The position numbers were made by a program, and so were the translations under genes. Positions 22,171-63,969 of a DNA stretch of 64,000 bases are shown piece by piece. Every line of letters begins with the position of its first letter. Within the stretch, counting starts at the first letter, position 1. Source of the DNA: Phallusia mammillata (taxonomy: Eukaryota); NCBI GenBank assembly GCA_965637545.1, contig OZ281497.1, forward strand, positions 27,094,001 through 27,158,000, given 5' to 3'. Under the pieces are notes generated by a model that worked only from the letters and a program-made list of their open reading frames with translations, was not told the DNA's origin and did not search any database.

Positions 22171-25100
22171 ATGCGTGCAACCATGGCCGAAAACCAACCT
22201 GAAAACGAATGTTCTAATTCGACTGTTTCGCTAAATCTACAAGACCGACCCCAGCCCAACTTGACACAAGAATTGGCTGTTGTTGGAACCCCAACCAGAC
22301 TGCCCCAGGAATCTGAAGAAATCAAGGCACAACACTCCGGTGACGACGTTGTCCCCTTACCCCCACAATATGGTGAAGTTATACCACAACAATCAAGAGA
22401 TGTTTTGCCACAACCACATTCTGCTCAAATGTATCCAGTCAATAACGAAACTGCAGTGATAAACATGGTAAGAAATTCGGACCAAATTCAGTTGTTGGTT
22501 TAAAAATGTTTCGTGCTTTGCAGGAGAGCGTAGAAGCGCCACAGTTTGGAGACACAATCACCCACATAGCTGGATCAATGTACAACGCACCAGTAGAACT
22601 TCATCAACACAACTATTATACCCTTGTTCAGCAACGGCAAACAGTTCACTTAACAAAAGAACAACCCCACACGTCAACACAACCACCTGCACCAGTTGCT
22701 TGGAAGGAAGAAACTTCGCCAAACATCTTTGATGAAACCCCGCCCACATCATATCAACCACAAACTTGCCACAACCAGCCGACTTCATCACTCAACACGG
22801 AACCAGAAAACCTCCGTGCTAGTGCAACACATCCTAGGAAAGCAATAAACCAATCTACATCCGCCCAGTCTTCTGCAAGTCAACATCAAAAAGCAACACA
22901 AGCCACGGGAAATAAAATATGTAAGAGCATTTTTTGTTTGTTTATTTAAAAAAAATCTACTTAAAATTGCCACTCAATATTATTGCCTGGTGTATACCGG
23001 CGTGATGCGATTTGTGTTTCACATAGGTTTTCTTGTTTAGGTGAACAACTGAAGTCTCGACTAAAGAGAGAAGTCAAAGCCACTGCCAGTGAAGAATCGA
23101 CACTAGCTGAGTTTTTGGACCGAGCTATAGAACCCGTCCCCGTTGCCATAATCAACAAACCCAAAAAAATTAGCGACGAGTTTCAAGCAGAAGGACATTA
23201 TCACTACAAAAAGGAACTTTACAAAACACCAAAAAGTGACATAACCGGTAATGAAATTTTCGTTTGCGCAAAACAAACTGCACAACAAGAGGCGGAGAAG
23301 AAGTTCAAAGCGCATAAAATGGAAGCAAAACAAAACTACATCGAAAAACATGGGAATATAGTTGGTGTGGTTGGTCAAGCTGGAATAGGAAAAACTACAT
23401 CAGCAAAAATGTGGGCCCTGCAAGCATTAGAAGGACAGTTGGGTGGAAGAGTATCGTTTATCTTTTACATTGTGATCAGGTTTCTTCAGTTCAACGGTGA
23501 GATGACACTTCTTCAGTTTCTCATTTCCACCCTGTTGTCGGATTGGATCTGCACACCTGATGAGGCAACCATTATTCTCGCTGCCATTTGCAATGATCCT
23601 CATGTTTTGATCATTTTCGATGGTTTTGATGAGGCAGCATTTAAATCATTTTCCAGCTTGGTATCGAAACCACTATTACACGGAAAAAATTCTGCAGAAA
23701 GTTACCTAAAGCATTTAGCAGGAGGAAACTTGCTTCCACGAGCTCGAAAGATTTTCACATCACGACCAGCTCAGCTATACAAGCTCCATCCGTCATACCG
23801 ACCCAAGTTTATAGTTCAGATACTTGGTTTAACTCCAACATCACAGAATGAACTCGGACGTCAGATATGTGGAATCAAATATGATGCTATACACCAAAAA
23901 CTTGTCCGAAACCCTAATGTATTTGCATACTGTTATGTTCCTGTCAATTTCATATTGACACTGAATTACCTGATGAATTACGATGGAGATATTCAGTTTG
24001 TTTCGCTTACACGTGTTCTTGCTTTCACTTGTAGCCAATACGTCACAACAGATCATCTGCAGGGCCAAGAATGCGAGTTAGACAAACTGGCCAAAATGGC
24101 TTGGGATGCATTTCTTGAGGGCAGGTTGGTATTTAAAGACAAGAACTTTAAAAATGCTGGAATAAGACCTTCCACAGCCGAAGCATTCCTTACCACATCA
24201 GTAACGAAGCAAGTAAGTCTCAAGCTGACGATATTAGATGGACACAAAGTAAGATACTTTTCTCACCTCACCTGGCAGGAGTTTTTTGCCGCCTTCTATC
24301 TGATGATGATCATGCCTTTAAAGGAATTTAAAAAGCAGCTTAAACAACTTAGCAAAGACAGATGGGAAGTAGTTTCCAAATTTGTTTTCGGAATCTGCGA
24401 TTCTTGGGTTTTCAATAGTCTTGAAAACCTTGTCGGTGCAAGTTCCAGCAAAGAATGGTCACTCAAGAAGGTCTTGCTAACCGAATTATTGACTGAAATG
24501 AGCACAGCAAACATAATGCGAGTGTGTAGCTGGGCTCATGAGTCAAATGACATTACCTCATCTGTTGCTTCACTACTTCCTGATGAGCTCGACCTCAGTC
24601 GTTTATCTCTCCTTCCAGATGACATCGAAAACCTTTCCTACGTGCTTCAACACAGAGCCTGCCCGGTAGGCCTATTACTGCGTTTAGGATTTGCTGCGAT
24701 TTTGCTTCCAGGACCATGTTATGCTAAGGAAAATGTAAAATCTTTGCGACATAACTAAATTTAGTGAAATATGTATGACAAAGTGGTTGATTCAAATAGC
24801 AAAACTAGTTTAGTAGTTTTCCATCGTGCTTCAACTCAGAGCTAACCCGATATTGATGTGGTTTAATTTGCGTTTAAAAAGGCATTTGCCAATGGTGGCA
24901 GTATATATAATTATTCGTTACATTGTTACGTAACACAATCACATATGACGTCACCAGCACCTGTGTTACGCTTTCAAACCTTGTGATGCTCTAGTTCAGT
25001 AATCAACGGGGGCGTTTGCTCTCACTAAGGGGGCGCTGAAGAATAATTGGGCGATTGGGGGGCGTTGGGAAAAGTTTGCGATTGGGGGTCGACCTATGAG

Positions 25101-28100
25101 CATAAAAGATGCGCATGTAAATTTTGACTTATGATACTGCGTTTTATTTAAATAATGCGTGTTGCCTAAGAGAATGTCAGCTATGGTTTGTTTACCACGT
25201 TGCAAATAATTTGAAAGATAAATGGAAGAACCGATTGCAAAGGTCAGGATTGGCCACTCTGATATTGTGTGGTGTTTTTATGTCTGCTGTGTTATGTGTT
25301 AACATGTTCTTGTTTTTAATTTAATCATCAGCTGGAGACACTCGACCTCTCCTACAACAAGATCGGTGATCTGGGTGCAACTTCGTTGGCTCGTTGTCTT
25401 CACAAAATCGAAATGCTTGTGCTGCGACGATGCGACGTCGGAAGTGAAGGAGTCAGACAACTCTGCGATTCTGTACTGCAACTGAAAATGCCTGTAAGTA
25501 AATTACGGTATCCTTTTTACTTAAACAATATCAAAAAGATTTTGGTAACCATGTTGCGTGATTACGTGTATCAAAATATCTTTATTACATGCTGGATACG
25601 CATTTAGTGTTTTATTTTTTTTACCGGAGTGCTATTTGTATGTTTAGGATTGATACAAACAAATGTTTTATTACTTCGGATTTGTTTGTTAAGTTAATGT
25701 TTTCCGACATTTCACTCTAAATTCTTAAATGAAAAAAACAATATCATCTATTTAGTCCTTGTCTGGATGCAGCGTTTGCTGGGATCGATTGTGTATTAAC
25801 CACTGGGGAGGCGCATACTTTTTGGTCTTGACATCTATAAGCCAAGAAAGGTTGGGTAACAGTACTGTAACCCAGCAATCAGATTATTTAAAACCTTTGC
25901 TTTTTGAGTTGTAGTGCAATAACGCGACACAAATGTTTATTATGGGTCCCCTGCCCTGAAGGGGACACATATTGTTTTTGTCCGTATTTTTTTTTCTTTT
26001 TTTATGTTTTTTTTTCTTTTTTCCGTCTAACGCGGATTTGTTCCCACGTTTTGGTCAAGAAAGAATGGTTCAAACTTTTTCAAATTTACACACATTACTG
26101 ATATTGGTCTAAAGATGGTCCATGTGAATTTTAACCCCGTTTGATCCCTCGGTTCACCCACAGCCCCCCAAAACGTAAATGTGTATAACGCTCGTTTGGT
26201 CAAGAAAGACACTGTAGGCAGAAGTACCAAGGGAGTAACTCACTGGTTTACGATAGCGGGAGGGCTCAGCTTGACGTCGGACAGACGTTTTACGAGACGT
26301 CGTTTCGGTGATTAGAAATCAGCTGTTTTGCACAGCAATGCCATGTCGTTTTATTAAGTTATCACTCACATTTTTGGTTTTGGCGAAGGTTTCACACCTA
26401 TGACGTGATTTAAACGTAATAACCGTGCTTCGGTTTTGTATATGTCAAGCAAAACTTTGTTAATCAAAGTAAACATGAAAAAATGAATTTGACTTTTTTG
26501 CAAAACAAATGTTTTTTTAAATGCTCGTTGTCAGGTTGGCCGCCGCATGATTACGGGTTACTTAAGGTCAACTAGTAGGTATTACAAACACTGTTCAGAA
26601 CTTTCTTTCGTCATAAGGTAGCGGTTTTTTTTTGACAATCAATTTAGGAGTCAATGCTCAAGGCATGTAAAAATTAGGCTTAACGGTATTGTTGAACACT
26701 CAGGACGGCGTGCTATTGAAAACGGTGTCAAAAGGTCGAACAGTCGTTTGGCGTGTGCACCCTGAGAGGTTACTACAAGTCAATGGTACTCGTTTTGCGA
26801 AACAAAGTTAAATGAAAAACAATTTGTTATGTATAAACTTGTAGCAAATTGCTTTTTAATTTAAAGTGTCTGTAACACAACTGTTACAGCTTTCTAAAAA
26901 AATTGTGTTCAAAACCCGACCTTGGACTACAATATCTGGGTCAAAGCAAGAGATTAAATTAAAGTCTTTGTTAATTCAGTGCTTCGCAATCTTATACGGA
27001 CTGCATACCACTTGACAACTTTCTCTTTCGCTGTGTACCACCTATCATAAACCCTGTTTGAATTGATAGACCAAAAATAGGCCGATTTTCTCTCCCTAGA
27101 AAAGAGCGGTCAATCAGCGAATGACCACAAGGCTGCCAACGCATTTCGTGCAATACGAGAGTGTCGTTCTTTGCCAAATGTTTACTTTTTTTTGTAATCA
27201 CGATCTGCTGTGCAACCCCCAGGTGTGAAAACACAGTAATATACAAAAAACTTAATCGGGGATGTATTTTGTGTACTTGTTTTCAGTATTTAACATGTTT
27301 GTTGCATGGTTTTCAACTTAAATTATTTGTATGTAACACACAATATCTCAAACGAGTTTAACACCAACAGTACAATACACAAAATAGAACCGGTAAACAA
27401 AGTCTTCACTAGATGGGGTGGTTTAAATCAAAGTGTCATGCGGTTTGGAAATAAAAATCTTTGCAGAAAAAGTCCCCAAAACAGCTATAAAAAAGAACAA
27501 TTTGAACTGTTGTTTTTTGTCTCTTTTATTCCGTTTCTATGGCCGTAAGTCTCACAGGACTTGTTCCAAATTGTGGCCCATTCGGACCAGCAGCAACTAC
27601 GTTACTTTTGGCGAAAACAATAATTACATGCAACAACTTTATACTAGTATTCGTTAAGGCATCGATTATAACTACACATTTACAAAACTGCTTAAAACCA
27701 GACACCGGCAACACCTAACCAAATAAACCAAAAGTTCCTTCTTGCGTGGAGGTCCGCTTAAACGCTTTTGTGCCTTCGATCGAAGGAACAAAGCGGAAAC
27801 GTCGAGTCGGACCAACGGCCATGGAAATGGAATATGTTTTAGCTGTGTCGCTATAAAAAGTAAAAATGTAAACAATGCACGCTGGTTGCATTGGGTGTGC
27901 GAAAAGGTACGGTCCTTCCTTATCTACTTATGCATTCAAGCGCTTGCTTTAGGTGTGTTGTGACATGAATATTTTTTTGCGCATAGTGCTCCCTAGCGTC
28001 CGTCGAGACATTAAAATTAACCTAACAAACTTCACGTTGATGATTTTTCAAGGTTGCTTTGTTGCTAATTATTATTTTGCTTTAACATCAGCTGAAGAGA

Positions 28101-36129: not shown

Positions 36130-36400
36130 TTGGACACATATTCTTTTTGTCCGTATTTTTCTTTTTTTTTTCGTTACCTTTTTATATTTTCTTTTTTCTT
36201 TTCTTTTTCTATTTCTCTTTTCTCTGTCTAACGCTGGTTTGTAAGAGTGCTTTAAATTTGGACACAAGTTTGTTATTAATCGGAATTCGATACTCCTGAA
36301 GTTTGACTCCAAATGACCCAGCGGTTCACCCACAGGCCCGAAAATCATTCACCCACAGGAAAACTTTTTTAAACGCTGGTTTGTAACCCCCGTTTGTTCA
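36130..36400 (+). mobile_element. DINE-1/HINE-like repeat copy upstream of NLR-2
   Basis: ggacacatatt...tttttgtccgtatttt, a TC-rich tract and ctgtctaacgc, homologous to 25960-26200. Confidence 0.5.
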
Positions 36401-37105
36401 ACAAATTTGTCGTTCAACTGGTGCAATGCTAAACAAAATACTAGTTGTTGTTTCAAAAACTTGTATTTGCTAACGTTTCGCCCACCAGAACGACAGGGCT
36501 TTATCAGAGCAATGAATGATGTATTGCGAGCAACAAGCGAGAAAGCGCAAGAACAGCGGGATACGATGAAAATTAATTACACAATAACAAACGACATCCG
36601 AAATGATCCAAAAAAACGGGCTAAGGTTTTGCCGTCGTTGCGATTAAGAGCATTCGAATTGGAATTTATAAAGCAATTTATAAGGCAACGGTTCGTTATG
36701 CCTGTTTGTACTGCCTCAGCGTCGGGTGGTTGCTATGTTTACGAAATAGGCGCGGTCACATCGTGAACCACTTAAACCGATTTTTATCTGTTTCAAAGGT
36801 AGCCGGGTAAATAGATTTAGTGCTTGAGTAGCGACTTCTCCCTTACACTTTGGGATTTTATTTGGCCCACAGCACACCACTGTACAATTTAATTAGTTTT
36901 TGTACCTCCAACTCTACACTTGCTACAAGCTGTTGGTGTTGTCCAATATTGGTTTGCAATAAAACAACGCGACTGAGCTTTCGATATAGCACACTGTCCT
37001 ATAATTAAATACAACTCATGCCACCTAAATGTTTAATTTCATTTGTTAATGTAAATAATTGAATCTTGTTTACAACATACAGGTTTTATCAAGTTTGATA
37101 ATTTT

Positions 37106-40100
37106 ATGCCAGTAAGCATGTCAGAAAACATGGAAAACCAACCTCGAAATGAAAGTTCTTATCCCACTGTTGCCCAAACTGTCCGTCACCGACCAAACAC
37201 GACACAAGAATCGGGTGACCGTGAACTTCACACAAGACTGCCTCAAGGTTTCCAACAATCTGGTGAAGTTGTCCCACGAACCGAACAATCAAGAGATGTT
37301 GTACCCCAAACTCATCCAGCTCGATTAATTCCAGTCGATTATGAGAACAAAGTTATAAATATTGTAGGTAATAAGAGCGACAGAGTTTGTGTAGTTGTTA
37401 ATCATTTGTATGTTTTTCAGGATAAAGCAGATGCTCCACGGTTTGGTGACACAATCACCCACATCCACACCACCGGACCAGTGCACAACGCACCAGTTGA
37501 ACTTCATCAACACAACTATTATACCCTGATTCAGCAACAACAAACGGTTCAGCATATACATGAACAACCTCACACTTCAACACAATCATCTGCACCAGTT
37601 GCTTTGGAGGAAGAAACCTCGCCAAAATCATTTAATGAAACCCCGCCCACATCCCATCAACCACATACATGTCGCAGCCATTCGAATTTATCTCTGAATG
37701 CAGAACCAGAAACCCTAGGTCATACGGCATCACAACCTAGGACAGCGACAGGCCAATCTACAGCATCTCACGCTTTGCCAAATGAAAACCAGCAAACAAC
37801 ACAAGTAACCGAAAATAAAAAATGTGAGGACAGGTTTTGTTTGGTAGTAGTTGTTTGGTAATACAAAATTTGTAAATATACCACTAATTAAAATACCGTA
37901 ATTAAACTGGTGCGTTTTACAGAATTAGTGTTTTACAGAATGTATCTTGTTTAGGTGAACAACTGAAATCTCTACTAAAGAGAGAAGTCCAAGCCATCGC
38001 CAGTAAAGAATCGACACTAGCTGAGATTTTAGACCAAGCTATAGAACCCGTCCCCGTTGCCATGGTTAACAAACCACAACAAATTGGCGACGAGTTTCTA
38101 GCAGAAGGACATTACCATCGCAGAGATGAACTTTACAAAAGACCAGAAAGTGACATCACCAGTGAGGAATTGTTCCCTCGTGCAAAACAGAATGCGCAAC
38201 AAGAGGCGGAGAAGAAGTTCAAAGCACATAAAATGGAAGCAAAAGAAAACTACATCGAACAACATGGTAATATAGTTGGTGTGGTTGGACAAGCTGGAAT
38301 AGGAAAAACCACATCAGCAAAAAAGTGGGCCCTACAAGCATTAGATGGACAATTGTGTGGAAGAGTATCATTCTTCTTTTACATTGCCATCAGGCTTCTT
38401 AAATTTAAAGGTGAAATGACACTACTTCAGTTTCTGATTTCCACCATGTTATGGGATTGGGACTGCACACCTGATGAGGCAACCAGTATACTTGCGGCTA
38501 TTTGCATTGACCCTCATGTTTTGATCATTTTCGATGGTTTAGATGAGGCTGCTTTCAAATCATTTTCTAATTCGGTTTCAAAACCCATATTAAATGGAGT
38601 AAATTCTGCAGAATGTTACTTGAAGAATTTGGCGGGAGGAAACTTACTTCCACGTGCTCGAAAAATTTTTACATCACGACCAGCTCTACTATACAAGCTC
38701 CATCCATCATACCGACCGAAGTTTATCGTCCAGATACTTGGTTTAACTCCAACGTCACAGAATAAACTCGGACGTCAGCTATGTGGCGAAAAATATAATG
38801 ACATACATCATAAACTGACCCAAAATCCTAATGTCTTTGGATACTGTTATGTTCCTGTCAATTTCATATTGACACTGAATTACCTGGTGAATTACGATGG
38901 AGATATTCAGTTTGTTTCGCTCACACGAGTTTTTGCTTTTACTTGCAGCCAATACGTAACAACAGATCATCTGAAGGGCCAAGAATGCGAATTGGACAAG
39001 CTAGCCAAAATGGCTTGGGATGCATTTCTGAAAGGCAAATTGGTATTTAAAGAAAAGAACTTTAAAAAAGCAGGAATAAAACCTTCCACAGCCGACGCCT
39101 TTCTCGCCACATCAGTAACAAAGCAAGTCAATCTCAAGCTGACGATATTAGACGGACACAAACTGAGATACTTTTCTCATCTCACCTGGCAGGAGTTTTT
39201 TGCCGCCTTCTACATGATGGTGATCATGCCCTTTAAGGAATTTCAGATGCAACAGAAACAACTAACCGAGGACAAATGGGAAGTTGTTTCAAAGTTTGTT
39301 TTTGGAATCTGCGATTCTTGGGTTTTTAATAGTCTTGAAATCCTGGTCGATGCAAGTTCTACTGAAGATTGGTCACGCAAGAAGTCCTGGCTGACCGAAC
39401 TCTTGAATAAAATGAGCACAACAAACATGAAGCGAGTGTGGAGCTGGGCTCATGAGATGAATGATCGAGAAATTGTGTCGTCTATTGCTTCTCTACTACC
39501 TGATGTGCTCGACCTCAGTGGTTCATCTCTATTTCCTGACGACGTTGAAAACCTTTCCTTCGTGCTTCAACACAGAGCCAACCCGGTATCACTGTGGTTT
39601 AAATTCCGATTTTTTCCAAAAAGCATGTGCTACTTTTAACCAAAATGTCAACAACTGCCATCGTCAGTAAATGGCATTAAAAAAATAAAACTACTTAGTA
39701 CTTTGGCATGTGGTTAATATGATTCTCATGCTTTATTTTAAAGAGAAGGTCAAGTTATTTTGTGTGTAATGCAAGACCTTATGGACAGATTATGTTGGCA
39801 TTAAGACACAAAATATATTGCCATTAGTAATAAAATAAGTCTGCTTCGAGACATCAAAACAGACAAAAGATTCACTACATTCGAATGGTTTTATTGACTT
39901 TAAGATATGAGTTCCATAAAGTAACCTGTTTAACAAATATTGGTCTTCCAGCAGATTTTTATTTAAGAATAAATTTCGACGTCGCATGCAAGTTTACTGA
40001 TGATAACTCTTCACTGCTCACATAATTATAAAACAACATATGCGACATAACTTTGTATATAACATTACAAAACTCTTGTTCGAAGTTTGCGTAAAATAGC

Positions 40101-43100
40101 TATTTAAAACATTGTCCAGAAAATAAGCACATTCCTTTTCAGAGATATTAAAACAAAGGCCACCAAAAAACGTAATTTTGCAACCAAAATGTAACGACCC
40201 ACCTATCCACCATTATGATATTATATCATCATTTATAATGCTTGCCTTACAAGTAGGGTAAGCTTTAAAGCGCCAGACAAATGCAAAAGCATCAACCTGT
40301 ACGAATCTAAAAAATCAACATCAGACCGCGGGCCACTTCTGGTCCGTTGATGGTACCTGTTTCGCCCGCGTGAGGTCAAATAAATTAAATTAATATATAT
40401 ATATATAATGGCGTATTTGTGATGTGCATGAAATATGGTAGTGTTGGTTAGTTTCGAAAAACTGCCATTGTTTTCTCTTTCTTGTATGTTTACGTATTGA
40501 CTCACATGCGTAAGCGAACTGCTACATGTGATGCTGGTCAAGTCTATATAAAACAAGTTGTCCAACCCAATGTTACGCGATAAAGGCTATGCAGCCATTT
40601 GTGTCCAAAACAATACAGCGGGTATAGGAGGAAAAACAAATTTATAGTCGGATTTTTGCAAGTTGAAGATCTTACAATTTGATTGACCATATTGAATAAA
40701 AATTTCGGGTTTTGACATTTCGTCTTAATATTGCAAGCAATGCGGAAAATCATCCTGAGCAGAATTGAGTTATTATACCCAAAATAACTGACTTATGTTG
40801 GTTCGGCACTCCAACATAAGTCAGTTATTTTGGGTGGCCCTATTTCTAATATTGATTGCCCACCCCTGCTTTACAGAAATATTTAGTAACTTAACCTGCA
40901 TTAATCTAACAAATGTCACATTGTTGATATTTACGTTTCCTATGTTACTAGATGACATTTGTTATTTTGCTTTAACATCAGCTGAAGAGACTGAACCTCA
41001 ACAATATCGGTGATCTGGGTTTATCTTTATTGGCTCGTTGCCTTCACAATATCGAAAACCTGAATCTGGAGTGGTGTGACATCGGAAGCAAAGGAGTTAG
41101 ACAACTCTGCGATTCTGTACTGAAACTGGAAAAACCTGTAAGAAATTTTTATTCATGCAAGTAAACAATTATAAAGAATATTTAGTTTGCCATTTTCAGT
41201 GAATACTTGGGTCAGAGTACTTTGATACCATATAGGATACGCTTCAAATGTTAAATTTGAAATAAAAATCAATTCTTTTCGCTTATAACAGCATTATAAT
41301 CATCTTCTGCAATGCTTACATTCAAAATGACGTTTTCAAAAATGATGCACATCATAAATACGCCATTTTTTTACCTTTTAATTTACTTGACCTCACGCGG
41401 GCGAAGCTGGTACAGTCAACGGGCGGGATGTTGCCCGCGGGCCGTAAAATGACCAGGTCTTCTGTAAACACTGATGTCGATTTTTCAGACTCGTACAGGT
41501 TCACGCTTTTGCATTTGTGTAGCGCTTGAAAGCTTACCAGAATTGTAAGGCAAGCATTAGAAATGATGATATAACATCACAATGGTGGATACTTGGGTCG
41601 TTACATTTTTGTTGCGGAATTACGTTTGTTTGGGACTTTTGTTTTTGTTTGTGATATTTCTGACAAGGAAGGTGCTAATTTTACGTACCATATTTTAAGG
41701 AGCTATTTTACGTAAACTTTGAACATGAGTTTTGTAATGTTACATGCAACGTTATTTCGCATATGTTTTAACATTTCAGCGTAATATTGCAAGCAACGGC
41801 AAAAATTAATACTGAGCAGAAAAACAGAAAGTTCAAGTTGTTGGTTGGGCCCTAAACACAAGTCAGTCTTTTGGGTGGTTCCTTTCCAAAATTAATTCTC
41901 CACCCCTGGTTTATAGAAGTATATAGAAACTTTTCCTGCATTAATCTAACAAACGTCACATTGTTGATTTTCAACGTTTGCTATGTTACGAATTGACATG
42001 TGATATTTTGCTTTAACATCAGCTGAAGAGACTCGATCTCTCCCACAACAAGATCTGTGATCTGGGTGCATCTTTATTGGCTCGTTGTCTTTACAATATC
42101 GACGAGCTTGTGCTGCGGGGATGTGACATCGGAAGTGAAGGGGTGGGACTGCTTAGCGATTCTGTACTGCAACTGGAAAAACCTGTAAGAAATTTTTATT
42201 CGTGCACGTGAACAATTATGAAGAATATTTAGTTCGCCATTTTCAGTGAATACTTGGGTCAGAGTACTTTGATATAAAGTAGGATACGCCTCAAATGTTA
42301 AATTTGAAATAAAAATCAATTTTTTCCGCTGATAACAGCATTATAATCATCTTCTACAATGCTTTTATTTGAAATGACCTTTAATCGTTATCTGCGGTAC
42401 ATTTTGTCTCTTTCCAATTTGTTTGTCGAGACTGCAAAAAAAAAAACACTTCACACCATAAAGATCGCGTTTGCCTTTCCCGATGACGGATAAGCATAAC
42501 ATTACAAATCAAGTAGTCACTTCACCTTTTGTTTCACGTTTTAAGCGCGCTGTACGTTCAGCCATCGGCTCTAATCAGAATGCTAATGTGTTAAAATGCT
42601 GGAGTCAACACATGCCAATTAAAGTTTTTACCACACATTGTCAGCTTGGTCAACTCGCATCAAAAGAGCAAAAAACATCAAGCGACTTAAAATGACAAAA
42701 ACTGCATTAACACCTTCACAGTTGACCCCAGGTCGTGTGTTTTTCGCGTTCGCCAATACGCCAGTGTCGTTTATGACATCTTATTTCAGGCTCTATTAAA
42801 TTTCAAGCGGGATGCAATACAGTACATTTAATAAATGTACATCTTGTTTACACTTTGCTCTAGTAGTTAGAACATTTATTACTCTAATGCATTAGGACAA
42901 ACACAAAGCAACGAACTAAATCAGCATTCACTTACCCACTTGTTTTCTATCAACACCAACAATAATTACACAAACAGAACCGGAGAACAGACGGGGTGGT
43001 TTGTTTCATGCTGTAAGGCGGTTGGGAAAGAAAAATGATGGCAAATAAATATCATCTTAAACAGTGTTTGCTAAAGAAAAAACAATTTGAACTGTCATTT

Positions 43101-46100
43101 TCTGCTCCTTTGTTACACTGTGTCACGATAGAAAGTAAAAATGTAAAACACTGAACGCGGGTTACATTTGCTATGTATAATGGTACACTCCGTTCTTATC
43201 TATCTGTGCATTCAAGTGTTTGCTTTGGGCTTGTTATGACATGAACATTTTTTTCGCGCATGCTGCCCCTGTTTGCCGTACCCCTCTTGTTGTGTATTAT
43301 AAACAACCTGTGTATTATAGAGACTTTGACCAGCATCACATGCAGCTTTTCACTTACGTATATGAGTCTATAAGGAAATATATATGAAATAAGGAAACAA
43401 TGGCAGTCTTTTCAAAATAAAACCAACGCTACCGTATTTCATGCACATCATAAATACGCCATTTTTTTACCTTTTAATTTACTTGACCTCACGCGGGCGA
43501 AACTGGTACAGTCAACGGGCGGGATGTGGCCCGCGGGCCGTAAAATGACCAGGTCTTCTGTAAATACTGATGTCGATTTTTCAGACTCGTACAGGTTCAT
43601 GCTTTTGCATTTGTGTAGCGCTTGAAAGCTTACCAGAATTGTAAGGCAAGCATTAGAAATGACGACCTAACATCAAAATGGTGGACACTTGGGCTGTTAC
43701 ATTTTTGTTGCGGAATTACGTTTGTTTGGGACTTTTGTTTTTGTTTGTGATATTTCTGACAAGGAAGGTGCTAATGTTATGTACCATATTTTGAGGAGCT
43801 ATTTTACGTAAACTTTGAACATGAGTTTTGTAATGTTACATGCAACGTTATTTCGCATATGTTTTAACATTTCAGCGTAATATTGCAAGCAACGGCAAAA
43901 AATAATACTGAGCAGAAAAACAGAAAGTTCAAGTTGTTGGTTGGGCCCTAAACACAAGTCAGTTAATTTGGGTGGCTCTCTTTAAAAATTAATTCTCCAC
44001 CCCTGGTTTATAGAAGTATATAGAAACTTTTCCTGCATTAATCTAACAAACGTCACATTGTTGATTTTCAACGTTTGCTATGTTACGAATTGACATGTGA
44101 TATTTTGCTTTAACATCAGCTGAAGAGGCTCGTCCTCTCCTACAACACAATCGATGATCTGGGTGCATCTCCATTGGCTCGTTGCCTTCACAATATCGAC
44201 GAGCTTGTGCTGCGGGGATGTGACATCGGAAGTGAAGGGGTGGGACTGCTTAGCGATTCTGTACTGCAACTGGAAAAACCTGTAAGAAATTTTTATTCGT
44301 GCACGTGAACAATTATGAAGAATATTTAGTTCGCCATTTTCAGTGAATACTTGGGTCAGAGTACTTTGATATAATATAGGATATGCCTCAAATGTTGAAT
44401 TTGAAATAAACAATGATTCTTTCCGCTGATAACAGCATTATAATCATCTTCTACAATGCTTTTATTTGAAATGACCTTTAATCGTTATCAGCCGTACATT
44501 TTGTCTCTTTCCAATTAATTTGACTGCAAAAAAGCACTTCACACCAGAAAGATCTCGTTTGTCTTTCCCGATGACGGATAAACATAACATTACAAATCAA
44601 TTAGTCACTTCACATTTCGTTTCACGTTTAAAGCGCGCTATACGTTCAGCCATCGGCTCTGATCAGAATGCTTACGTGTTATAATGCCTGGAGTCAACAC
44701 AACTTCACAGTTGACCCCAGATCGTCGAGTGTTCTTCGCGTTCGCCAATACGCAAGTGTCGTTTATGACATCTTATTTCAGGCTCCATCAAATTCGAAGC
44801 GGGTTGCAATACAGTACATTTAATAAATGTACATCTTGTTTACACTTTGCTTTAGTAGTTAGAACATTTATTACTGTCATGAAGGCACACACCTTTAAGC
44901 GGTTACCTGTATTGACTGCCACGTTTAAGACGCGGTACACGGTTATATACGAAACGTGACGTCATAATTCGGGGACGACATCTAGCGGTAAATACATACA
45001 TCACAACTTCCCTTCGTTTAAATTGAACTTAACTGACGTCTCGAAGGGTAAGGATTCACAATAACATTCAATGGACGTAAATGTACACGATTACGCCGAT
45101 ACAATACACCATCACTAGTTTTTACAAGATAAGAGCGATGAGATAACTGTTTTTCTATAGTTCCTTGTTGATCCCATAGTTTGTTTTGAGTATTGTATAG
45201 TTTCTGGTCTCCGAATGGAGGCGTGGGTTCGAATCCCACTTCTGACACCATGTCATAAACGCACACACCTTTAAGCGGTTACCTGTATTGACTGCCACGT
45301 TTAAGACGCGGTACACGGTTATATACGAAACGTGACGTCATAACTCAGGGACGACATCTAGCGGTAAATACATACATCACAATTACTCTAATGCATTAGG
45401 ACAAACACAAAGCAACGAACTAAATCAGCATTCACTTACCCACTTTTTTTCTATCAACACCAACAATAAATACACCAAACAGAACCGGAGAACAGACGGG
45501 GTGGTTTGTTTCATGCTGTAAGGCGGTTGGGAAATAAAAATGATGGCAGAAAAATATCATCCTAAACAGTATTTACTAAAGAAAAAACAATTTGAAATGT
45601 CATTTTCTGCTCCTTTGTTAAGCCGTGTCACGATAGAAAGTAAAAATGTAAAACACTGAACGCGGGTTACATTTGCTATGTATAATGCTATGCGTACGTT
45701 CCTTTCTTATCTACTTGTGCATTCAAGTGCTTGCTTTGGGCTTGATATGACATGAATATTTTTTCACGCATGCTGCCTCTGCTGTCCGTCGAGACATTAA
45801 AATTGAAAACAGTTTTTCCACATACGAGTGATTTTAATTTGATTACATGATATGTGTTCCATCAATTAAGCTGTTTAACAAATATTGGTCTTCCAGCAGA
45901 TTTTTTTTGTGGAATAAATTCCGAAGTCCATACGAGTTTTCCGATGTTAACTCTTCACTGATCACATGATTATAAAACAACATATGCGAAATGACGTTGC
46001 ATGTAACATTACAAAACTTTCTGTTCAAATTTTACGTAAAATAGCTACTCGAAACATGGTTCAGAAAATTTGCACATTCCTTATTAGAAATATTGCAAAC

Positions 46101-49100
46101 AAAAGTCGCAAACAAACGTAATTTTGCAACAAACATGTAACAACCCAAGTGTCCACCATTTTGATGTTATATAATTATTTCTAATACTTGCCTTACAAGT
46201 AGGGCAAGCTTTCAAGCGCTACATAAATGCAAAAGCGTGAACCTGTACGAGTCTGAAAAATCGACATCAGTGTTTACAGAAGACCTGGTCATTTTACGGC
46301 CCGCGGGCAACATCCCGCCCGTTGACTGTACCAGCTTCGCCCGCGTGAGGTCAAGTAATTTAAATAAAAAATATAAAAATGACGTATTTATGATGTGCAT
46401 GAAATACAGTAGTGTTGCTTTTATTTTGGAAAGACTGCCATTGTTTTCTTATTTTTATGTATATTTACGTAGTGACTCACATGCGTAAGCGAAATCTGCA
46501 TGTGATGATGGTCAAAGTCTATGTGAACACAAGTTGTCCAACCCATTGTTACGCGATAAAGCCTATGAAGCCATTTTGTGTCCAAAATAATACAGCGGGT
46601 ATTGGAGGGCAAGACATATGTATAGTTTGATTTTTACAAACTGCAGAGCTTAAACTCGAATATTATTCGCCATATTGACTAAAAATTTCGTGTTTTGACA
46701 TTTCAGCGTAATACTGCGAGTAATGGAGAAAATTAATCCTGTCCAGATTTGAGTTATTGTTGGTTCGGCCCTTCAACATAAGTCAGATTTTTGGATGGCT
46801 CCTTTCAAATATTAATTGCCCACCCCTGGTTTACAGAAGTATTTAATAACTTAACCTGCATTAACCTTACAAACGTCACATTGTTCATTTCTCACATTTG
46901 CTTTGTTACGAATTGACGTGTGACATTTTTCTTTAACATCAGCTGAAGAGCCTCGTCCTCTCCTACAACAAGATCGGTGATCTCGGTTTATCTTCATTGG
47001 CTCGTTGTCTTCACAATATCGACGTACTTGAGCTGTCGGGATGTGAGATCGGAAGCGAAGGAGTGAGACTGCTCAGCGATTCTGTACTGGAAAAACCTGT
47101 AAGAAATTTTGACTCATGCTCGTAAACAATTATAATAAAAACTTTGTTTATCATTTTTATTCCAAGCGGGATGCAATTCAGTACATTCAACAATTGCACA
47201 TCTTGTTTACACTTTGTTCTAGTGTTTAGTACATTTGTTACACTAATCAATGACAAAAAATACCAATATCACAGCGTCCTCATCTTGTAAAAAAAACCTA
47301 TGCACACTGCATGCGCAACTTAGTTTCCTCATTTAAGGAGTGTACTTTAAATTGCACTGTGACAAATGCTGTACAATGTCATGTTTCGCTAAAATCTTAT
47401 AATAACTTTTTCTGTGTCCGAAAATAGGAACTAGTTACATTTTTTTGGATTAATTTTTTATATTATTGTTAGGAAGTAAGTTTTAAATTGAATTAAACCA
47501 GGAGTTGGGAATTACATTGGTTCCAGTTTCCCTGTAAACAGGGCCCGTTTAGCGGAGAGCCCTATCGTGTAAGTTATTGACCAAAACTGGATTTGCCTTT
47601 TAACTGCTTAGTGTGATTAACGGACTATCCCAATTTCCCCGATTTAAAAGCCGAGCAATGCTTCTCTATATAACAAACGAAAAGCGGTTGTTCGCGCACA
47701 ATCTAACAATTCCTCACTCTTGTTTGTGTTGTAGCATACTGCCCTAGGATAACTGTATGTGAGGCAATCCAGCAAAAGTAAATATAATATAAATGTAAAA
47801 AAAGAAACAATGAACTGGTGTGCCTAAAATGGAAATAAATGTGAAGAAACGATTAATGAATAAACAATACGTAACATCTCAAATCAAGCAGTCACTTACC
47901 AACTAGTACTTTTTTACATTATACACGCTTAACACTTATAACATAGCTCAGAATCTAATAACTTTTTTGCAAAGGTTAGTTGTGGGCTGGCCTCGTGCGT
48001 TGGTAAATGAACTAATTTCCCTCACATCGTCGCATTACATAAACACGAAATACATCAAGTAAACAAATCACACATGACTTCATTTTAACCCGGGTGTAAT
48101 GCGTTCGCCTGTAACAAGATGGTCATGTTTGACAAACTCAAAACGGGGATATCTTGTGTTCTCCTCCTATTCTGTGTTCAAAAAACCTAATCATTTGTTT
48201 CCCAAAAATACTGTGTAAAACAATTCTTAAACCAGTAGATTGGAAGCGATAAATATTTTGTAAGCCAATGATTGTCTGATAATTCACGCAAACCTATTAA
48301 GCGTAAATCAAATGCGAGACTTCTAAACAAAATAAACATTCACATAAAAAGCACCGGTTTTCAATACTGCCACTAAACAAACATTTCCACATTGCTCAGC
48401 ATACTTTAAAGTATGGTATAAAAATACGAAACCTAATTTCGACTACGAATGTCCTCAAACGCATTGCGCGCACTACAGGATAGGCCTTAATGACTAACTA
48501 TTCATATTCATTTAACTCATTCACTACTAAACTTCATTTTGCAAAGATACATTGTGTGTACTTCTCTCCTGAGTCCAGCAAATTGATTAAATTAATAACT
48601 TCGCACAGTAAAATACAATATGACAAAAATAAAATGCTAAAACACGCAGGGAAAGAATAACCGGCCACATTGCTTAACGAGTCCATGTTACGGATTTTGT
48701 TTGATCCCAGAAACTTGTGACGCAGTTTAAAACTTGTCACGTGGACAGTGAAACGAAACGTTTTGTGAGTAAAGTCGAATTAGGGTAAAAATGTAAAATT
48801 TTAATTTCCAGTCAATTGTTTTTCGACTTTGTTCGGCACATTGTGTTAGAACAAAACAATTGCAGTTCAGTTCAATGGAAGAAGTAAAACCTGAAGCTTA
48901 AACCAAACCTACGTGACAAATGCAGTGCACCAACATATGCAGGGCGCCACCGAGTGTCAGGCACGACATAAGCGAAAAAACAGCAAAAAAGTTTGAAAAG
49001 AATGGAAGGCAAAGCAAAAAAGTTATAAGAAAATGCGCAGCTGAATTTGCTGGTGTCAACAATAAACAACTGGAAAATATTTCGTTAACTGAAACGACGT

Positions 49101-49457
49101 ACCATTGTGTTCTGCGAAATATTACCTGGCTTAGTTTAAATGTCAAATGAAATACATTTTGTGATTCTTTGTTTTCATGTCCTGTCATCATGCTGTTAGC
49201 GTACGATTACGTGACGTCATATATTTTTAATTGGTTTCGTAAAAATGCATAAATCAAACTGATTGAACTCACTTATCAGTTGTTTTATTTAGATGGAATA
49301 TCTTGATCTGTCTAGGAACAACCTGACAGATGAAAGTGCTAAGTCATTGGCTCGATGTGTTCACAACATCAGCGTTTTGTGTGTTTGGGATAGCAACTTC
49401 ACAGAAGCAGGGAAGAATCTCATCAGATCAAAGTCGCGAGGGAGAGTTGGAATCTAA
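37106..49457 (+). CDS. NLR-2: RHIM-like N-terminus - NACHT - LRR, ~1030 aa with four internal LRR cassettes
   Basis: Exons 37106-37363, 37421-37823, 37955-39585 (GQAGIGKTT, LIIFDGLDE), cassettes A 40982-41137, B 42023-42184, C 44120-44281, D 46943-47098, terminal 49293-49457 (TAA). Phases are consistent, total 3093 nt. Confidence 0.9.
44875..45381 (-). mobile_element. 507-bp miniature (TRIM-like) Gypsy-derived LTR element
   Basis: 131-bp LTRs TG...CA at 44875-45005 and 45251-45381 (4 differences); 5-bp TSD attac at 44870-44874 and 45382-45386; empty site at 42878-42882. PBS tggtgtcagaagtgggat next to the 5' LTR; purine tract gaagggaag next to the 3' LTR; integrase-tail peptide RSYLVKTSDGVLYRRNRVHLR. 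Confidence 0.92.
45202..45250 (+). pseudogene. 3' half of tRNA-Leu (CAA-type) with CCA, embedded as an extended PBS; not a tRNA gene
   Basis: TTCTGG-TCTCCGAATGGAGGCG-TGGGTTCGAATCCCAC-TTCTGACA-CCA: 3' anticodon stem, long variable arm, T-arm, acceptor strand and CCA. No 5' half is present. Confidence 0.85.
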
Positions 49458-61700: not shown

Positions 61701-63969
61701 CTTCTAGAATTTGCTACAAATTCAACCTGCACTTGATATATTTGTGACGCAACAGCCACTCGATTGCCTCTTCTTGACAAGTAACAAATCTTTTGCCATT
61801 TGGTGTTAGTTTAAAATTATGTTTAGAGCTATTAGCGTGCATTCTTATATTGTTATTTAAATTATTTTGTCGCAAAAAAAGATAAATCGGCATAATGGGT
61901 CTCGGGTGTTCTATGAACAATGGACAAACTCCTATTTTTAGTCGAAATAAGTGACAAACCTATATGCCTTATCGTGTAAAAGTCAGAACTGGTCACAGTG
62001 GCATTTGTGGTTCGTTTTATGTCTGCTTAGTTGTATGTTAACGTATGTTTGTTTTACTTTAAACATCAGCTGAAGAGACTCAATCTCTCCTTTAACAATG
62101 TTGGTGATCTGTGTGCAAATTCGTTGACTAGTTGTCTTCACAACATCGAAATGCTTGTCCTGCAAGGATGCGACATGGGAAGCGAAGGAGTAAGACAACT
62201 CTGCGATTCTGTACTGCACTTTAACAAACCTGTAAGTAGTTTAACCTTTGTACGTAAACGTACGTGAGTACATATATATAAGCTATTGCTGCTGGGCATA
62301 ATATCAAGTTTTTAGAGCTTTTCTAGCAAATGTAATTTTATTCCGACGTTTCTACGTCCTATACAGGTCGTCTTCATCAGGGTAAATAACACTGAATGCG
62401 ACTAGTACAGTACACGAAAAACAAAGGAAAAAAAATGGAACGCCAGCACGTCACAGCGCGATAACGAATGATTGGGCCTCTAATCTTTAAGCAAGTGCCG
62501 GTAGCACGCTGAAAGCATCACGTCTGTTTTGATGTTCATTGTGTTGCCCCGTTGGTGAATGTTTCTTTTCTCACGAAATAGTATTTTCTTGTAGTCAGGC
62601 TACCGAGCCAAAACAGACGCCGCATTGAAATCAATACGGCAGCCTTGTGATACCGCGTGATTGGAAAGGGCCGACTTCTTCGCTTTGCTGTTTGCAACAT
62701 CCCGCTGATGTTCTTTTCGGCGGGTAGGCGCAGAGAATATAATATACAACGCCTCGTTGTTCAAAGGTATTGATTGGATCTTTCGGGTGACTAGAAAGAG
62801 CTTGCGGAGACTATTGGCAGATTGGACGCCAACCGCTATGCCGAAGTCACGCAACATACGCTGTAAAATATCCGTCAGTTTCGGTATGTACGGAAGTGTC
62901 ACAAAACCCTCTGTTTTTGGATGGGTCGCCGGATTGGGCAAGTTGCCCGTCGACCGCGGAGAATCCAGTTGCGGTAGCCGTTAAATTTCAAGGCTTTGTG
63001 AACCTTGTCAGTTCCTCCTCGCAGTCGTCGCTATGAGTGCACAAGTGTCGTGCCTGATCTTATAGAGAACGAACCACCCCCCTTTTCTGGTGTGTGGGTT
63101 GGTGAGATCGAAAATTGAGATACATGTCGGTACTCGTTAGCTTGTAGTACACTATTGAGTACAAGACACCGGCGTTGGTTCTTGTGCTTTCTGTTTTTCG
63201 TTTGTTTGTCGTGCACTGCACTCGGCCGCATTCAGTGTTATTTACCCTGATAAAGACGACCTGTATAGGGCGTCGAAACATCGGAACAAAATTACATTTG
63301 CCAGAAGAGCTCTCCAAACTTGGTACGTGAATATGTACGTCATATATAATACTTTTATTATGGGTCCCGTTCCCCTTTTTTCTCAGTTAAAGTTTGTCCA
63401 TGTACTTTTGTCATGAGATCTTAGGTGGATTTGGATGAAACTGGATTGGAGTTTTTAGCTGAATACTTACTTGATTAAAAGGCAGGCTCAGTATGAAGTG
63501 CCTGTGTGAATTACATAATTTGCTTTTGCATCTGCATTGCTTTCAAAAACCTGACTAAGAATCGCAAAAACGCAATTTCGCAACAAAAATGTAAGAACCC
63601 AAGCGTTACTGTGATGCTACTATGTCATCATTTCTAACACTTGCCTTAGAACTTAGGTAAATTTTTAAGCGCTGCACAAATGCAAAAGCAAGAATCTTTA
63701 CGAATCGGGAAAATCAAAGTCCGTATTTACCTTGCAAACGTCACATTGGTGATTTTTCATGATTGCTTCGACACGAATTAACATGTGATATTTTGCTTTA
63801 ACATCAGCTGAAGAGCCTCGACCTCTCATGCAACAAGATCGGTGATCTGGGTGCAGCATCATTGGCTCGTTGCGTTCACAATATTGAAATGCTTGAGCTA
63901 CATGGATGTGCGATCGGAAACCATGGAGTGAGGCAACTCTGTAATTCTGTAGTTCAACTGGAAAAACCT
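58783..63969 (+). CDS. NLR-3 (3' end beyond the window): NACHT-LRR paralog with an in-frame TGA at codon 30; null allele or re-initiated form
   Basis: Exons 58783-59079 (TGA at 58870-58872, in-frame ATG at 59041), 59138-59444, 59546-61230 (GQAGIGKTT, LIIVDGLDE), LRR cassettes 62070-62231 and 63808-63969. No other disabling lesion was seen. Confidence 0.8.
62281..63323 (-). mobile_element. 5'-truncated Penelope-like retroelement with terminal repeats in inverted orientation, each carrying a hammerhead-like motif
   Basis: Minus-strand frameshifted coding remnant at about 63150-62590: YKLTSTDMYLNFRSHQPTHQKRGVVRSL..EEEL..KALKFNGY (RT C-terminal region), FVTLPYIP.., KEHQRDV..SALSNHA..IDF..VLAR (GIY-YIG remnant). 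Terminal repeat with CTGATGA..GAAACGTC on the minus strand at 62343-62382, and an inverted copy on the plus strand at 63245-63284. Confidence 0.85.

What the first reader, a model, noticed from the sequence alone, without database searches (positions are those of the whole stretch)
39990..47098. Inverted-repeat network around in-frame LRR cassette exons: possible RNA-pairing-driven combinatorial splicing
Seen in sequence: NLR-2 is arranged NACHT - [rev] - A - [fwd] - B - [fwd] - C - [rev] - D - terminal exon, where [fwd] and [rev] are the same 450-550 bp intronic segment. Every cassette is phase 0-0 (156 or 162 nt), so any subset can be skipped in frame (up to 16 combinations). Possible pairings would loop out A (rev1/fwd1), B+C (fwd1/rev2) or C (fwd2/rev2), and these pairings compete. 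In the ~150-bp core, fwd1 and rev2 differ at 1 position while fwd1 and fwd2 differ at 4, suggesting recent exchange between the inverted copies. Established: competing intronic RNA duplexes control exon choice (Dscam1) and promote exon skipping and circRNA formation. Inference: this is a receptor-diversification mechanism, at RNA level or through DNA inversion/conversion.
Basis: partly seen in the sequence, partly recalled or inferred. Interest (0 to 1): 0.76.

Follow-up and report, generated by a model that had tools for sequence, protein, structure and literature searches.

The report
Flipped intron repeats around immune-receptor exons
A sea-squirt immune-sensor (NLR) gene has four interchangeable repeat exons separated by one intron segment that lies twice forwards and twice backwards; this looks like a young by-product of exon duplication, and no RNA data could be obtained to show whether it affects splicing.

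Summary
NLR-2 is an intact ascidian NACHT-LRR gene. It has four LRR cassette exons of 156 or 162 nt, all phase 0-0. A 420-550-nt intron segment (S) lies in the order rev-A-fwd-B-fwd-C-rev-D. The "1 versus 4 differences" claim is exact.

S is not a mobile element. It is part of the duplicated exon-intron unit, and its core sits in the "rev" orientation in paralogue NLR-3. It was inverted once in the B/C lineage, with microhomology and filler at the junctions. The 2,097-bp B/C duplication then copied it. Outside a roughly 150-nt core, the S lineages are 80-87% identical. Inside the core, rev2 is a near-copy of fwd1. That is one recent gene conversion, fwd1 to rev2, which left 134 nt of perfect complementarity.

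S diverges at the same rate as neighbouring intron. Two paralogues in the window and five other tunicate NLR loci show no comparable repeat network. Selection for pairing is therefore not indicated.

The RNA duplexes would be very stable (-464 to -772 kcal/mol). I did not find this arrangement elsewhere in the scan's notes.

The parts
37106..37861 (+). N-terminal ORF/exon of NLR-2 (251 aa, no Pfam domain)
   Evidence: ORF; no Pfam hit; aligns with residues 30-158 of Phallusia COS1.5.
37957..39585 (+). NACHT exon of NLR-2 (NACHT, winged helix, HD2); donor GT at 39586, phase 0
   Evidence: Pfam hits; tblastn homology from 37957; donor AACCCG|GTATCA.
39846..40034 (+). Flank L, shared only by the two 'rev' introns (matches 45789-45978)
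   Evidence: BLAST; 82.4% identical between the A and D units.
40035..40555 (+). Repeat segment S, copy rev1 (ancestral orientation), in the intron NACHT->A
   Evidence: It carries a 29-nt deletion relative to the other copies.
40709..40981 (+). Flank F, the direct-repeat intron flank upstream of every cassette (also 41765-42022, 43861-44119, 46680-46942)
40982..41137 (+). LRR cassette exon A, 156 nt, phase 0-0
41345..41767 (-). Repeat segment S, copy fwd1 (inverted, truncated at its left end), in the intron A->B
   Evidence: TGTTTT microhomology at the junction with F.
41382..41535 (-). Donor side of the gene-conversion tract (fwd1)
   Evidence: Site patterns; coordinates.
42023..42184 (+). 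LRR cassette exon B, 162 nt, phase 0-0
43303..43863 (-). Repeat segment S, copy fwd2 (inverted), in the intron B->C. It is preceded by about 23 nt of filler (43280-43302).
44120..44281 (+). LRR cassette exon C, 162 nt, phase 0-0
45979..46520 (+). Repeat segment S, copy rev2, in the intron C->D (with flank L at 45789-45978 and flank R up to about 46680)
46206..46363 (+). Acceptor side of the gene-conversion tract (rev2). Within it, 46225-46358 is perfectly complementary to fwd1 (134 nt).
46943..47098 (+). LRR cassette exon D, 156 nt, phase 0-0
49293..49457 (+). Terminal LRR exon with stop codon; acceptor ...TTTAG|ATG, phase 0
63566..63717 (+). Core of S in paralogue NLR-3, in 'rev' orientation, 18 nt upstream of the F flank of its second cassette (63808-63969)

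Best explanation
The repeat network is a young structural by-product of LRR-cassette amplification in one of three tandem ascidian NLR paralogues.

**Shown by the sequence**
- The ancestral exon-intron unit was L-S-R-F-exon-G. S pointed the 'rev' way, as it still does in NLR-3.
- Units A, D and the B/C ancestor are all about 14-18% diverged from each other.
- In the B/C ancestor, S sits inverted and directly abuts F. L and R are missing. There is TGTTTT microhomology at one junction and about 23 nt of filler with a duplicated 11-mer at the other.
- A 2,097-bp tandem duplication (94-96% identity) then produced B and C, and so two 'fwd' copies.
- Finally, about 150 nt of fwd1 was copied into rev2 by gene conversion between inverted repeats 4.4 kb apart.

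**Inferred**
- The inversion arose by a repair- or replication-type event with microhomology (MMEJ or MMBIR style).
- In the pre-mRNA, the four copies can form four mutually exclusive duplexes of several hundred base pairs: rev1/fwd1 loops out A, rev1/fwd2 loops out A+B, fwd1/rev2 loops out B+C, and fwd2/rev2 loops out C.
- By analogy with inverted Alu pairs and nematode reverse-complementary matches, these duplexes probably cause some in-frame exon skipping, back-splicing and perhaps A-to-I editing. This would be an unselected side-effect, not an evolved diversification device.
For: - Repeat map and orientations.
- Cassettes and phase.
- 'rev' orientation shared with NLR-3.
- Identity between the A and D units is uniform: L 82.4%, S 83.2-86.9%, R 85.0%, F 84.7%, exon 85.2%. 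S is under no extra constraint.
- Outside the core, rev2 versus fwd is 85-87%. This is close to the 86-88% identity of D versus the B/C exon and flank.
- B/C duplication.
- Junction microhomology and filler, with no terminal inverted repeats or target-site duplication.
- Conversion tract and its direction.
- NLR-1 and NLR-3 have two cassettes each and no exon-flanking inverted repeat.
- Five other tunicate NLR loci show cassette arrays, one with 342-bp exon-plus-intron tandem units, but no comparable network.
- Duplex energies are -464 to -772 kcal/mol, against about -145 to -167 for shuffled sequence.
- Precedents: LRR exon modularity and NLRP3 exon skipping (PMC6642158); competing inverted Alu pairs (PMC11263572); reverse-complementary matches promoting both skipping and back-splicing (PMC8330042).
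Against: - There are no RNA data, so even the predicted side-effects are untested.
- A young feature can be functional without being conserved.
- The conversion that created 134 nt of perfect complementarity could be read as maintenance of pairing.
- The genome-wide copy number of S could not be measured. A low-copy mobile element is therefore not strictly excluded.
Confidence: 0.62

Rival explanations
1. This is a selected RNA-level diversification device. Competing intronic duplexes are used to produce a regulated repertoire of in-frame LRR isoforms (up to 16) and/or circular RNAs from one NLR gene.
For: - All cassettes are 3n and phase 0-0.
- There are four mutually exclusive, very stable pairings.
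- Recent conversion made a 134-nt perfect duplex between fwd1 and rev2.
- Short complementary matches are enough to drive skipping and back-splicing in other animals.
- Exons B and C differ only at the ligand-facing first LRR, so isoforms would differ in function.
Against: - S diverges as fast as flanking intron.
- The network is absent from both paralogues in the window and from five other tunicate NLR loci.
- Its origin is explained by two ordinary rearrangements.
- All cassettes have identical, consensus-like splice sites, which favours constitutive inclusion.
- No transcript evidence was found.
Confidence: 0.12
2. This is a DNA-level switch or polymorphism. Recombination between the inverted copies flips exon blocks (A, A+B, B+C or C) onto the antisense strand. 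Because every cassette is 3n, the resulting alleles or somatic variants would encode shorter in-frame receptors.
For: - The conversion tract proves that fwd1 and rev2 have recombined.
- A conversion-like tract can also result from two successive inversions.
- The arms are 268 nt at 92-94% identity and 2.4-4.5 kb apart.
Against: - All four cassettes are on the coding strand in this assembly.
- Only one short tract was exchanged.
- Identity outside the tract is about 85%, which is poor substrate for frequent crossover.
- No population or read data could be examined.
Confidence: 0.08
3. S is a non-autonomous transposable element that inserted independently, in both orientations, into the LRR introns.
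For: - It occurs in both orientations.
- It contains a GC-rich island in an AT-rich intron.
- Other introns of this genome hold many mobile elements (unchecked notes).
Against: - There are no terminal inverted repeats, target-site duplication or poly-A tail.
- All five copies sit at the homologous place upstream of a cassette, and none lies elsewhere in the 64 kb.
- The rev copies are collinear with their flanks L and R at the same divergence.
- There is no Rfam or tRNA-like hit.
- The metagenome scan gave only chance matches.
Confidence: 0.08
4. This is an assembly artefact, for example haplotypes stacked as a false tandem duplication or a mis-oriented repeat.
For: - The B and C units are 94-96% identical, within the range of allelic divergence in some ascidians.
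- The arrangement could not be checked against reads.
Against: - There are no gaps in the window.
- The copies differ by indels and 4-16% substitutions, so they are easy to tell apart.
- B and C differ by a sharp 72-nt exon hot-spot between stretches of 100% identity, which is unlike alleles.
- Five runs of this species from three studies (three guessed to be DNA, two of unknown type) hold 37-68% of the region's 31-mers.
Confidence: 0.04

Closest known systems
Modular LRR cassette exons of vertebrate NLRs (NLRP3 and relatives; Hoss et al. 2019, PMC6642158)
   Same: One exon encodes two RI-type LRRs. Exon borders fall at the same place in the repeat. Exon lengths are equal or nearly so and divisible by 3, so skipping stays in frame.
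   Different: Exons here are 156/162 nt against 171 nt in NLRP3. The gene is from a tunicate and has a non-death-fold N-terminus. Skipping has not been shown here. In NLRP3, skipping of exon 5 is not attributed to intronic inverted repeats.
Inverted-repeat (IRAlu / reverse-complementary-match) exon looping: circular RNA formation, exon skipping and alternative back-splicing by competing pairs (PMC11263572, PMC8330042)
   Same: Complementary sequences lie in introns on both sides of exons. Several alternative partners compete. Predicted products are skipped linear mRNAs and exon circles.
   Different: The arms are not dispersed transposons. They are copies of the gene's own intron, made by local inversion and duplication. 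The arms are unusually long (420-550 nt) and close together (1-4.5 kb). No back-splice or skipped junction has been observed.
Dscam1-type docking-site/selector competing RNA structures
   Same: The idea that mutually exclusive intronic duplexes decide which exons enter the mRNA.
   Different: There is no single docking site with one selector per variable exon. Pairing would remove exons rather than activate one. The elements are long, recently duplicated and not conserved in paralogues. This is not a member of that class.
Gene conversion between inverted repeats (as in palindrome arms and inverted segmental duplications)
   Same: A sharply bounded tract of near-identity lies inside diverged inverted copies. 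Site patterns conflict with the duplication tree.
   Different: The scale is small (about 150 nt), the tract is intronic, and it is a single event.
Tandem exon-plus-intron duplication expanding LRR arrays (e.g. brown-alga LRR exon shuffling, PMC3341825, abstract only; L026 here)
   Same: Whole exon-intron units are duplicated head to tail, followed by divergence at ligand-facing residues.
   Different: Here one unit carries an inverted intron segment. After re-duplication, this gives a rev-fwd-fwd-rev pattern.

Membership tests
Animal NLR (NACHT-LRR) gene | NACHT NTPase domain with winged-helix and helical domains | tested here: met
   Pfam NACHT 1.4e-17, NOD2_WH 2e-5, NLRC4_HD2 6e-5. Homologues are tunicate NLRs.
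Animal NLR (NACHT-LRR) gene | C-terminal RI-type leucine-rich repeats | tested here: met
   LRR_6 hits in the tested cassettes (A and B) and the terminal exon. Four cassettes plus a terminal exon were found by tblastn.
Modular LRR cassette-exon architecture (NLRP3-like) | Each exon is a whole number of LRRs, with symmetric phase and length divisible by 3 | tested here: met
   Exons are 156/162/162/156 nt. Every acceptor is CAG|CTG and every donor CCT|GTAAGA, all phase 0.
Modular LRR cassette-exon architecture (NLRP3-like) | Observed alternative inclusion of LRR exons | not testable with these tools
No transcript-derived proteins of this species were found.
Inverted-repeat-mediated exon looping (circular RNA / exon skipping) | Reverse-complementary sequences in the introns on both sides of the exon(s) | tested here: met
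   Four pairings of 420-550 nt at 76-94% complementarity, with energies of -464 to -772 kcal/mol.
Inverted-repeat-mediated exon looping (circular RNA / exon skipping) | Back-splice junctions or skipped isoforms that depend on the repeats | not testable with these tools
   No RNA reads could be laid.
Dscam1-type docking/selector system | One docking site plus one selector per alternative exon, giving mutually exclusive inclusion | tested here: not met
   The layout is two plus two copies of one long segment. Pairing brackets exons instead of de-repressing one.
Dscam1-type docking/selector system | Conservation of the pairing elements among homologues | tested here: not met
   Absent from NLR-1. 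NLR-3 has one partial copy only. Absent from L023-L026. L027 has only one 2-3-kb pair.
Transposable element (MITE/SINE-like) | Defined termini with terminal inverted repeats or a tail, and target-site duplication | tested here: not met
   Junctions show microhomology and filler, with no terminal inverted repeats or target-site duplication.
Transposable element (MITE/SINE-like) | Dispersed copies at non-homologous sites | tested here: inconclusive
   None in the 64-kb window outside homologous intron positions. The rest of the genome cannot be searched. The metagenome scan gave chance hits only.
Gene conversion between inverted repeats | A bounded tract of near-identity within diverged copies, with incongruent site patterns | tested here: met
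   1 of 150 mismatches in the core against 31 of 227 in the flank, p = 1.6e-6. Four sites show fwd1 = rev2 (derived) while fwd2 = rev1/NLR-3 (ancestral).

The most novel reading that the evidence does not exclude
The rev-fwd-fwd-rev network really steers splicing. Competing duplexes of several hundred base pairs would make a single tunicate NLR gene produce a regulated set of in-frame LRR-cassette combinations, and matching exon circles. Gene conversion between the inverted copies would keep the pairing strong. This would be an innate-receptor diversification mechanism built from the gene's own duplicated intron.
Probability: 0.1. Interest if true: 0.75.

Novelty: new member of a known kind. 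Interest (0 to 1): 0.34.

Why it matters
If the duplexes do drive exon choice, this locus would be a compact natural test case. It has four cassettes and four repeats within 7 kb. It could show how exon duplication with an inverted intron copy creates alternative splicing or circular RNAs in an immune receptor of an animal without antibodies.

As it stands, the locus mainly documents a clean, datable series of events: unit duplication, microhomology-type inversion, re-duplication, then conversion between inverted copies. It shows how LRR arrays grow in tunicate NLR clusters. The architecture alone is not evidence of a mechanism.

Tried and rejected
- **Read laying.** I submitted 41050-47049 with two RNA-guess runs, one DNA-guess run and one run of unknown type. 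The Rfam scans were split at 45150 and 45300. Local scripts used the whole window only as a BLAST subject.\n- **Protein word searches.** Searches with the NACHT exon, exon D alone (blank) and the Phallusia homologue to reach longer proteins found no protein of this species. No isoform models are therefore available.\n- **Exact-product look-ups.** Two small ORFs spanning repeat junctions were looked up to find independent assemblies. Neither is on record.\n- **Rfam.** The introns gave only sub-threshold chance hits.\n- **Metagenome scan.** A scan with the invariant S-core pattern gave 22 loci, all chance matches on BLAST.\n- **Clavelina RefSeq isoforms X1 and X2.** I checked whether these show cassette skipping. 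They do not. X1 joins the LRR exons of two tandem genes.\n- **Earlier notes of the scan.** They hold nothing on this repeat.\n- **Spliced protein.** The joined model was never built or searched.


Full report
**1. What is there**

The window holds three tandem paralogous NLR genes on the + strand. Their NACHT exons lie near 23.0-24.7 kb, 37.9-39.6 kb and 59.5-61.2 kb.

The middle gene, NLR-2, has these parts:
- An N-terminal ORF at 37106-37861.
- A large exon with NACHT, NOD2 winged-helix and NLRC4-HD2 domains.
- Four LRR cassette exons: A 40982-41137, B 42023-42184, C 44120-44281 and D 46943-47098.
- A terminal LRR exon at 49293-49457.

Every cassette follows the same acceptor (...TTTAACATCAG|CTGAAG) and ends at the same donor (AAACCT|GTAAGA). 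The lengths are 156, 162, 162 and 156 nt. The NACHT exon ends on a full codon (AACCCG|GTATCA, 39585) and the terminal exon begins on one. The chain is therefore phase 0 throughout, and any cassette subset can be removed in frame.

The nearest proteins are ascidian NLRs: Phallusia mammillata COS1.5 at 61%, and Ciona and Clavelina at 35-38%. This agrees with earlier notes that the genome is a sea squirt.

NLR-1 and NLR-3 have only two cassettes each within the window.

**2. The repeat**

An intron segment S occurs four times in NLR-2:
- rev1 40035-40555 and rev2 45979-46520 in one orientation.
- fwd1 41345-41767 and fwd2 43311-43863 in the other.

The best arms are 268 nt at 94% (fwd1/rev2) and 92% (fwd2/rev2) complementarity.

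A fifth, partial copy of the core lies in NLR-3 at 63566-63717. It is in the rev orientation, just upstream of that gene's second cassette.

A 19-base core pattern matches these five places and nothing else in the 64 kb, against 0.01 matches expected by chance.

**3. Origin**

The two rev introns are collinear over about 1.15 kb, in the order L-S-R-F-exon. Their identity is even throughout:

| Segment | Identity, A unit vs D unit |
|---|---|
| L | 82.4% |
| S | 83.2-86.9% |
| R | 85.0% |
| F | 84.7% |
| Exon | 85.2% |

S is therefore simply part of the duplicated unit, and it evolves like the rest of the intron.

In the fwd introns, L and R are missing.
- The inverted S abuts F directly at a TGTTTT microhomology.
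- On the other side it joins the preceding intron block X through about 23 nt of filler that contains a duplicated TGTGTATTATA.
- There are no terminal inverted repeats, no target-site duplication and no poly-A tail.
- Rfam finds nothing above threshold.

This is the signature of a repair- or replication-type rearrangement, not of transposon insertion. The exact mechanism is inference.

Units B and C are a 2,097-bp tandem duplication at 94-96% identity, which includes the inverted S. That explains the two fwd copies. The pattern rev-fwd-fwd-rev therefore needs only one inversion and one duplication.

**4. Exchange between inverted copies**

Outside alignment columns 251-400, the three S lineages are about equally distant:
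- rev2 versus fwd: 85-87%.
- rev1 versus the others: 80-87%.

Inside those 150 columns the mismatch counts are:

| Pair | Mismatches |
|---|---|
| rev2 vs fwd1 | 1 of 150 |
| rev2 vs fwd2 | 5 of 150 |
| fwd1 vs fwd2 | 4 of 150 |

rev1 stays at 83-87% to the other copies.

The jump is highly significant: 1/150 against 31/227 mismatches, Fisher p = 1.6e-6.

At the four fwd1/fwd2 differences, fwd2 carries the state of rev1 and NLR-3, while fwd1 and rev2 share the derived state. The simplest reading is one conversion event in which fwd1 was copied into rev2.
- The opposite direction would leave fwd2 about 14% diverged from rev2 in the core. It is not.
- The tract is at most 46206-46363 in rev2 (41382-41535 in fwd1) and includes 134 nt of perfect complementarity.

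But the exchange is intronic and does not alter the receptor.

**5. RNA pairing potential**

| Pairing | Loops out | Duplex energy (kcal/mol) |
|---|---|---|
| rev1/fwd1 | A | -464 |
| rev1/fwd2 | A+B | -600 |
| fwd1/rev2 | B+C | -629 |
| fwd2/rev2 | C | -772 |

Partners with shuffled sequence give about -145 to -167, and same-orientation controls give -159 to -183.

Each copy can pair with only one partner at a time, so the pairings compete. During transcription, the nearest-neighbour pairs (rev1/fwd1, then fwd2/rev2) would have the first chance. This last point is inference.

Published work supports the general mechanism:
- Complementary intron sequences bring distal splice sites together. 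They promote back-splicing and exon skipping, and multiple pairs compete (PMC11263572).
- A 13-nt match suffices in C. elegans zip-2 (PMC8330042).
- Modular LRR exons permit in-frame skipping in human NLRs (PMC6642158).

Some skipping or circularisation at this locus is therefore plausible.

**6. Evidence on function**

None could be obtained at the RNA level.
- The look-up of sequencing runs listed five holders of at least 37% of the words, from three studies (three guessed DNA, two of unknown type). It listed only weak RNA-guess holders, with at most 6% of words.
- Protein searches found no transcript-derived or annotated protein of this species.

Indirect tests speak against a selected device:
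- S shows no extra conservation.
- The network is absent from NLR-1 and NLR-3.
- None of five other tunicate NLR loci has a comparable network. L025 has one 80-nt pair. L026 has tandem exon-intron units without inverted repeats. L027 has a 2-3-kb pair between two tandem genes.
- The cassettes have identical, consensus-like splice sites.

**7. Verdict**

- The DNA-exchange inference is confirmed and refined as to direction and tract.
- The splicing and diversification reading is untested and, on evolutionary evidence, unlikely to be a selected mechanism.
- The architecture belongs with known inverted-repeat-flanked exons and modular LRR exons. It is not a Dscam1-type system.

**Constraints respected**
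- The spliced protein was never joined or searched. Exons were handled one by one by reference.
- No sequence was taken to be human.

Noticed in passing
window 42023-42094 versus 44120-44191: Exons B and C differ at 12 nucleotides, in 6 non-synonymous and 2 synonymous codons, all within the first 72 nt. The 100 nt upstream and the last 90 nt of the exon are 100% identical. The changed residues lie in the LxxLxLxxN stretch, the face of an LRR that usually contacts ligand (textbook assignment, not checked here). This suggests diversifying selection or micro-conversion from other cassettes; C shares LVLSYN with D.
   Followed up: partly
window 44882-45381: Intron C->D has about 500 nt that are absent from the otherwise collinear intron B->C. 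The block is bounded by a 139-nt direct repeat (44875-45013 / 45251-45389, 95%).
   Followed up: no
window 62302-62400 and 63227-63325: NLR-3 has a 99-nt, 90% complementary inverted repeat with both arms inside the single intron between its two cassettes. It brackets no exon.
   Followed up: no
window 40777-40835: A 59-nt near-palindrome (88%) lies in the flank just upstream of exon A. It gives only a sub-threshold, chance-level mir-590 match in Rfam.
   Followed up: no
window 37106-37861 (and 22440-22625): The N-terminal ORF of NLR-2 has no Pfam domain. It shares the motif IHTTGPV(H/Y)NAPV with Phallusia mammillata COS1.5. This is the RHIM-like motif flagged by another first-stage note on this window.
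   Followed up: no
L026 12418-13298: A tunicate-like NLR locus from a JGI metagenome has three LRR cassettes in 342-bp exon-plus-intron tandem units (78-94% identity). There are no inverted repeats between them. This is an independent example of unit duplication in LRR arrays.
   Followed up: partly
L027 (Clavelina lepadiformis, OX392440.1) 3001-47741: RefSeq 'isoform X1' (1228 aa) joins the LRR exons of two tandem NLR genes and skips the second gene's NACHT exon (36386-38176). 'Isoform X2' ends at the first gene's own terminal exon. A 2-3-kb inverted repeat (9145-11174 / 24185-27312) brackets the first gene's cassettes.
   Followed up: partly
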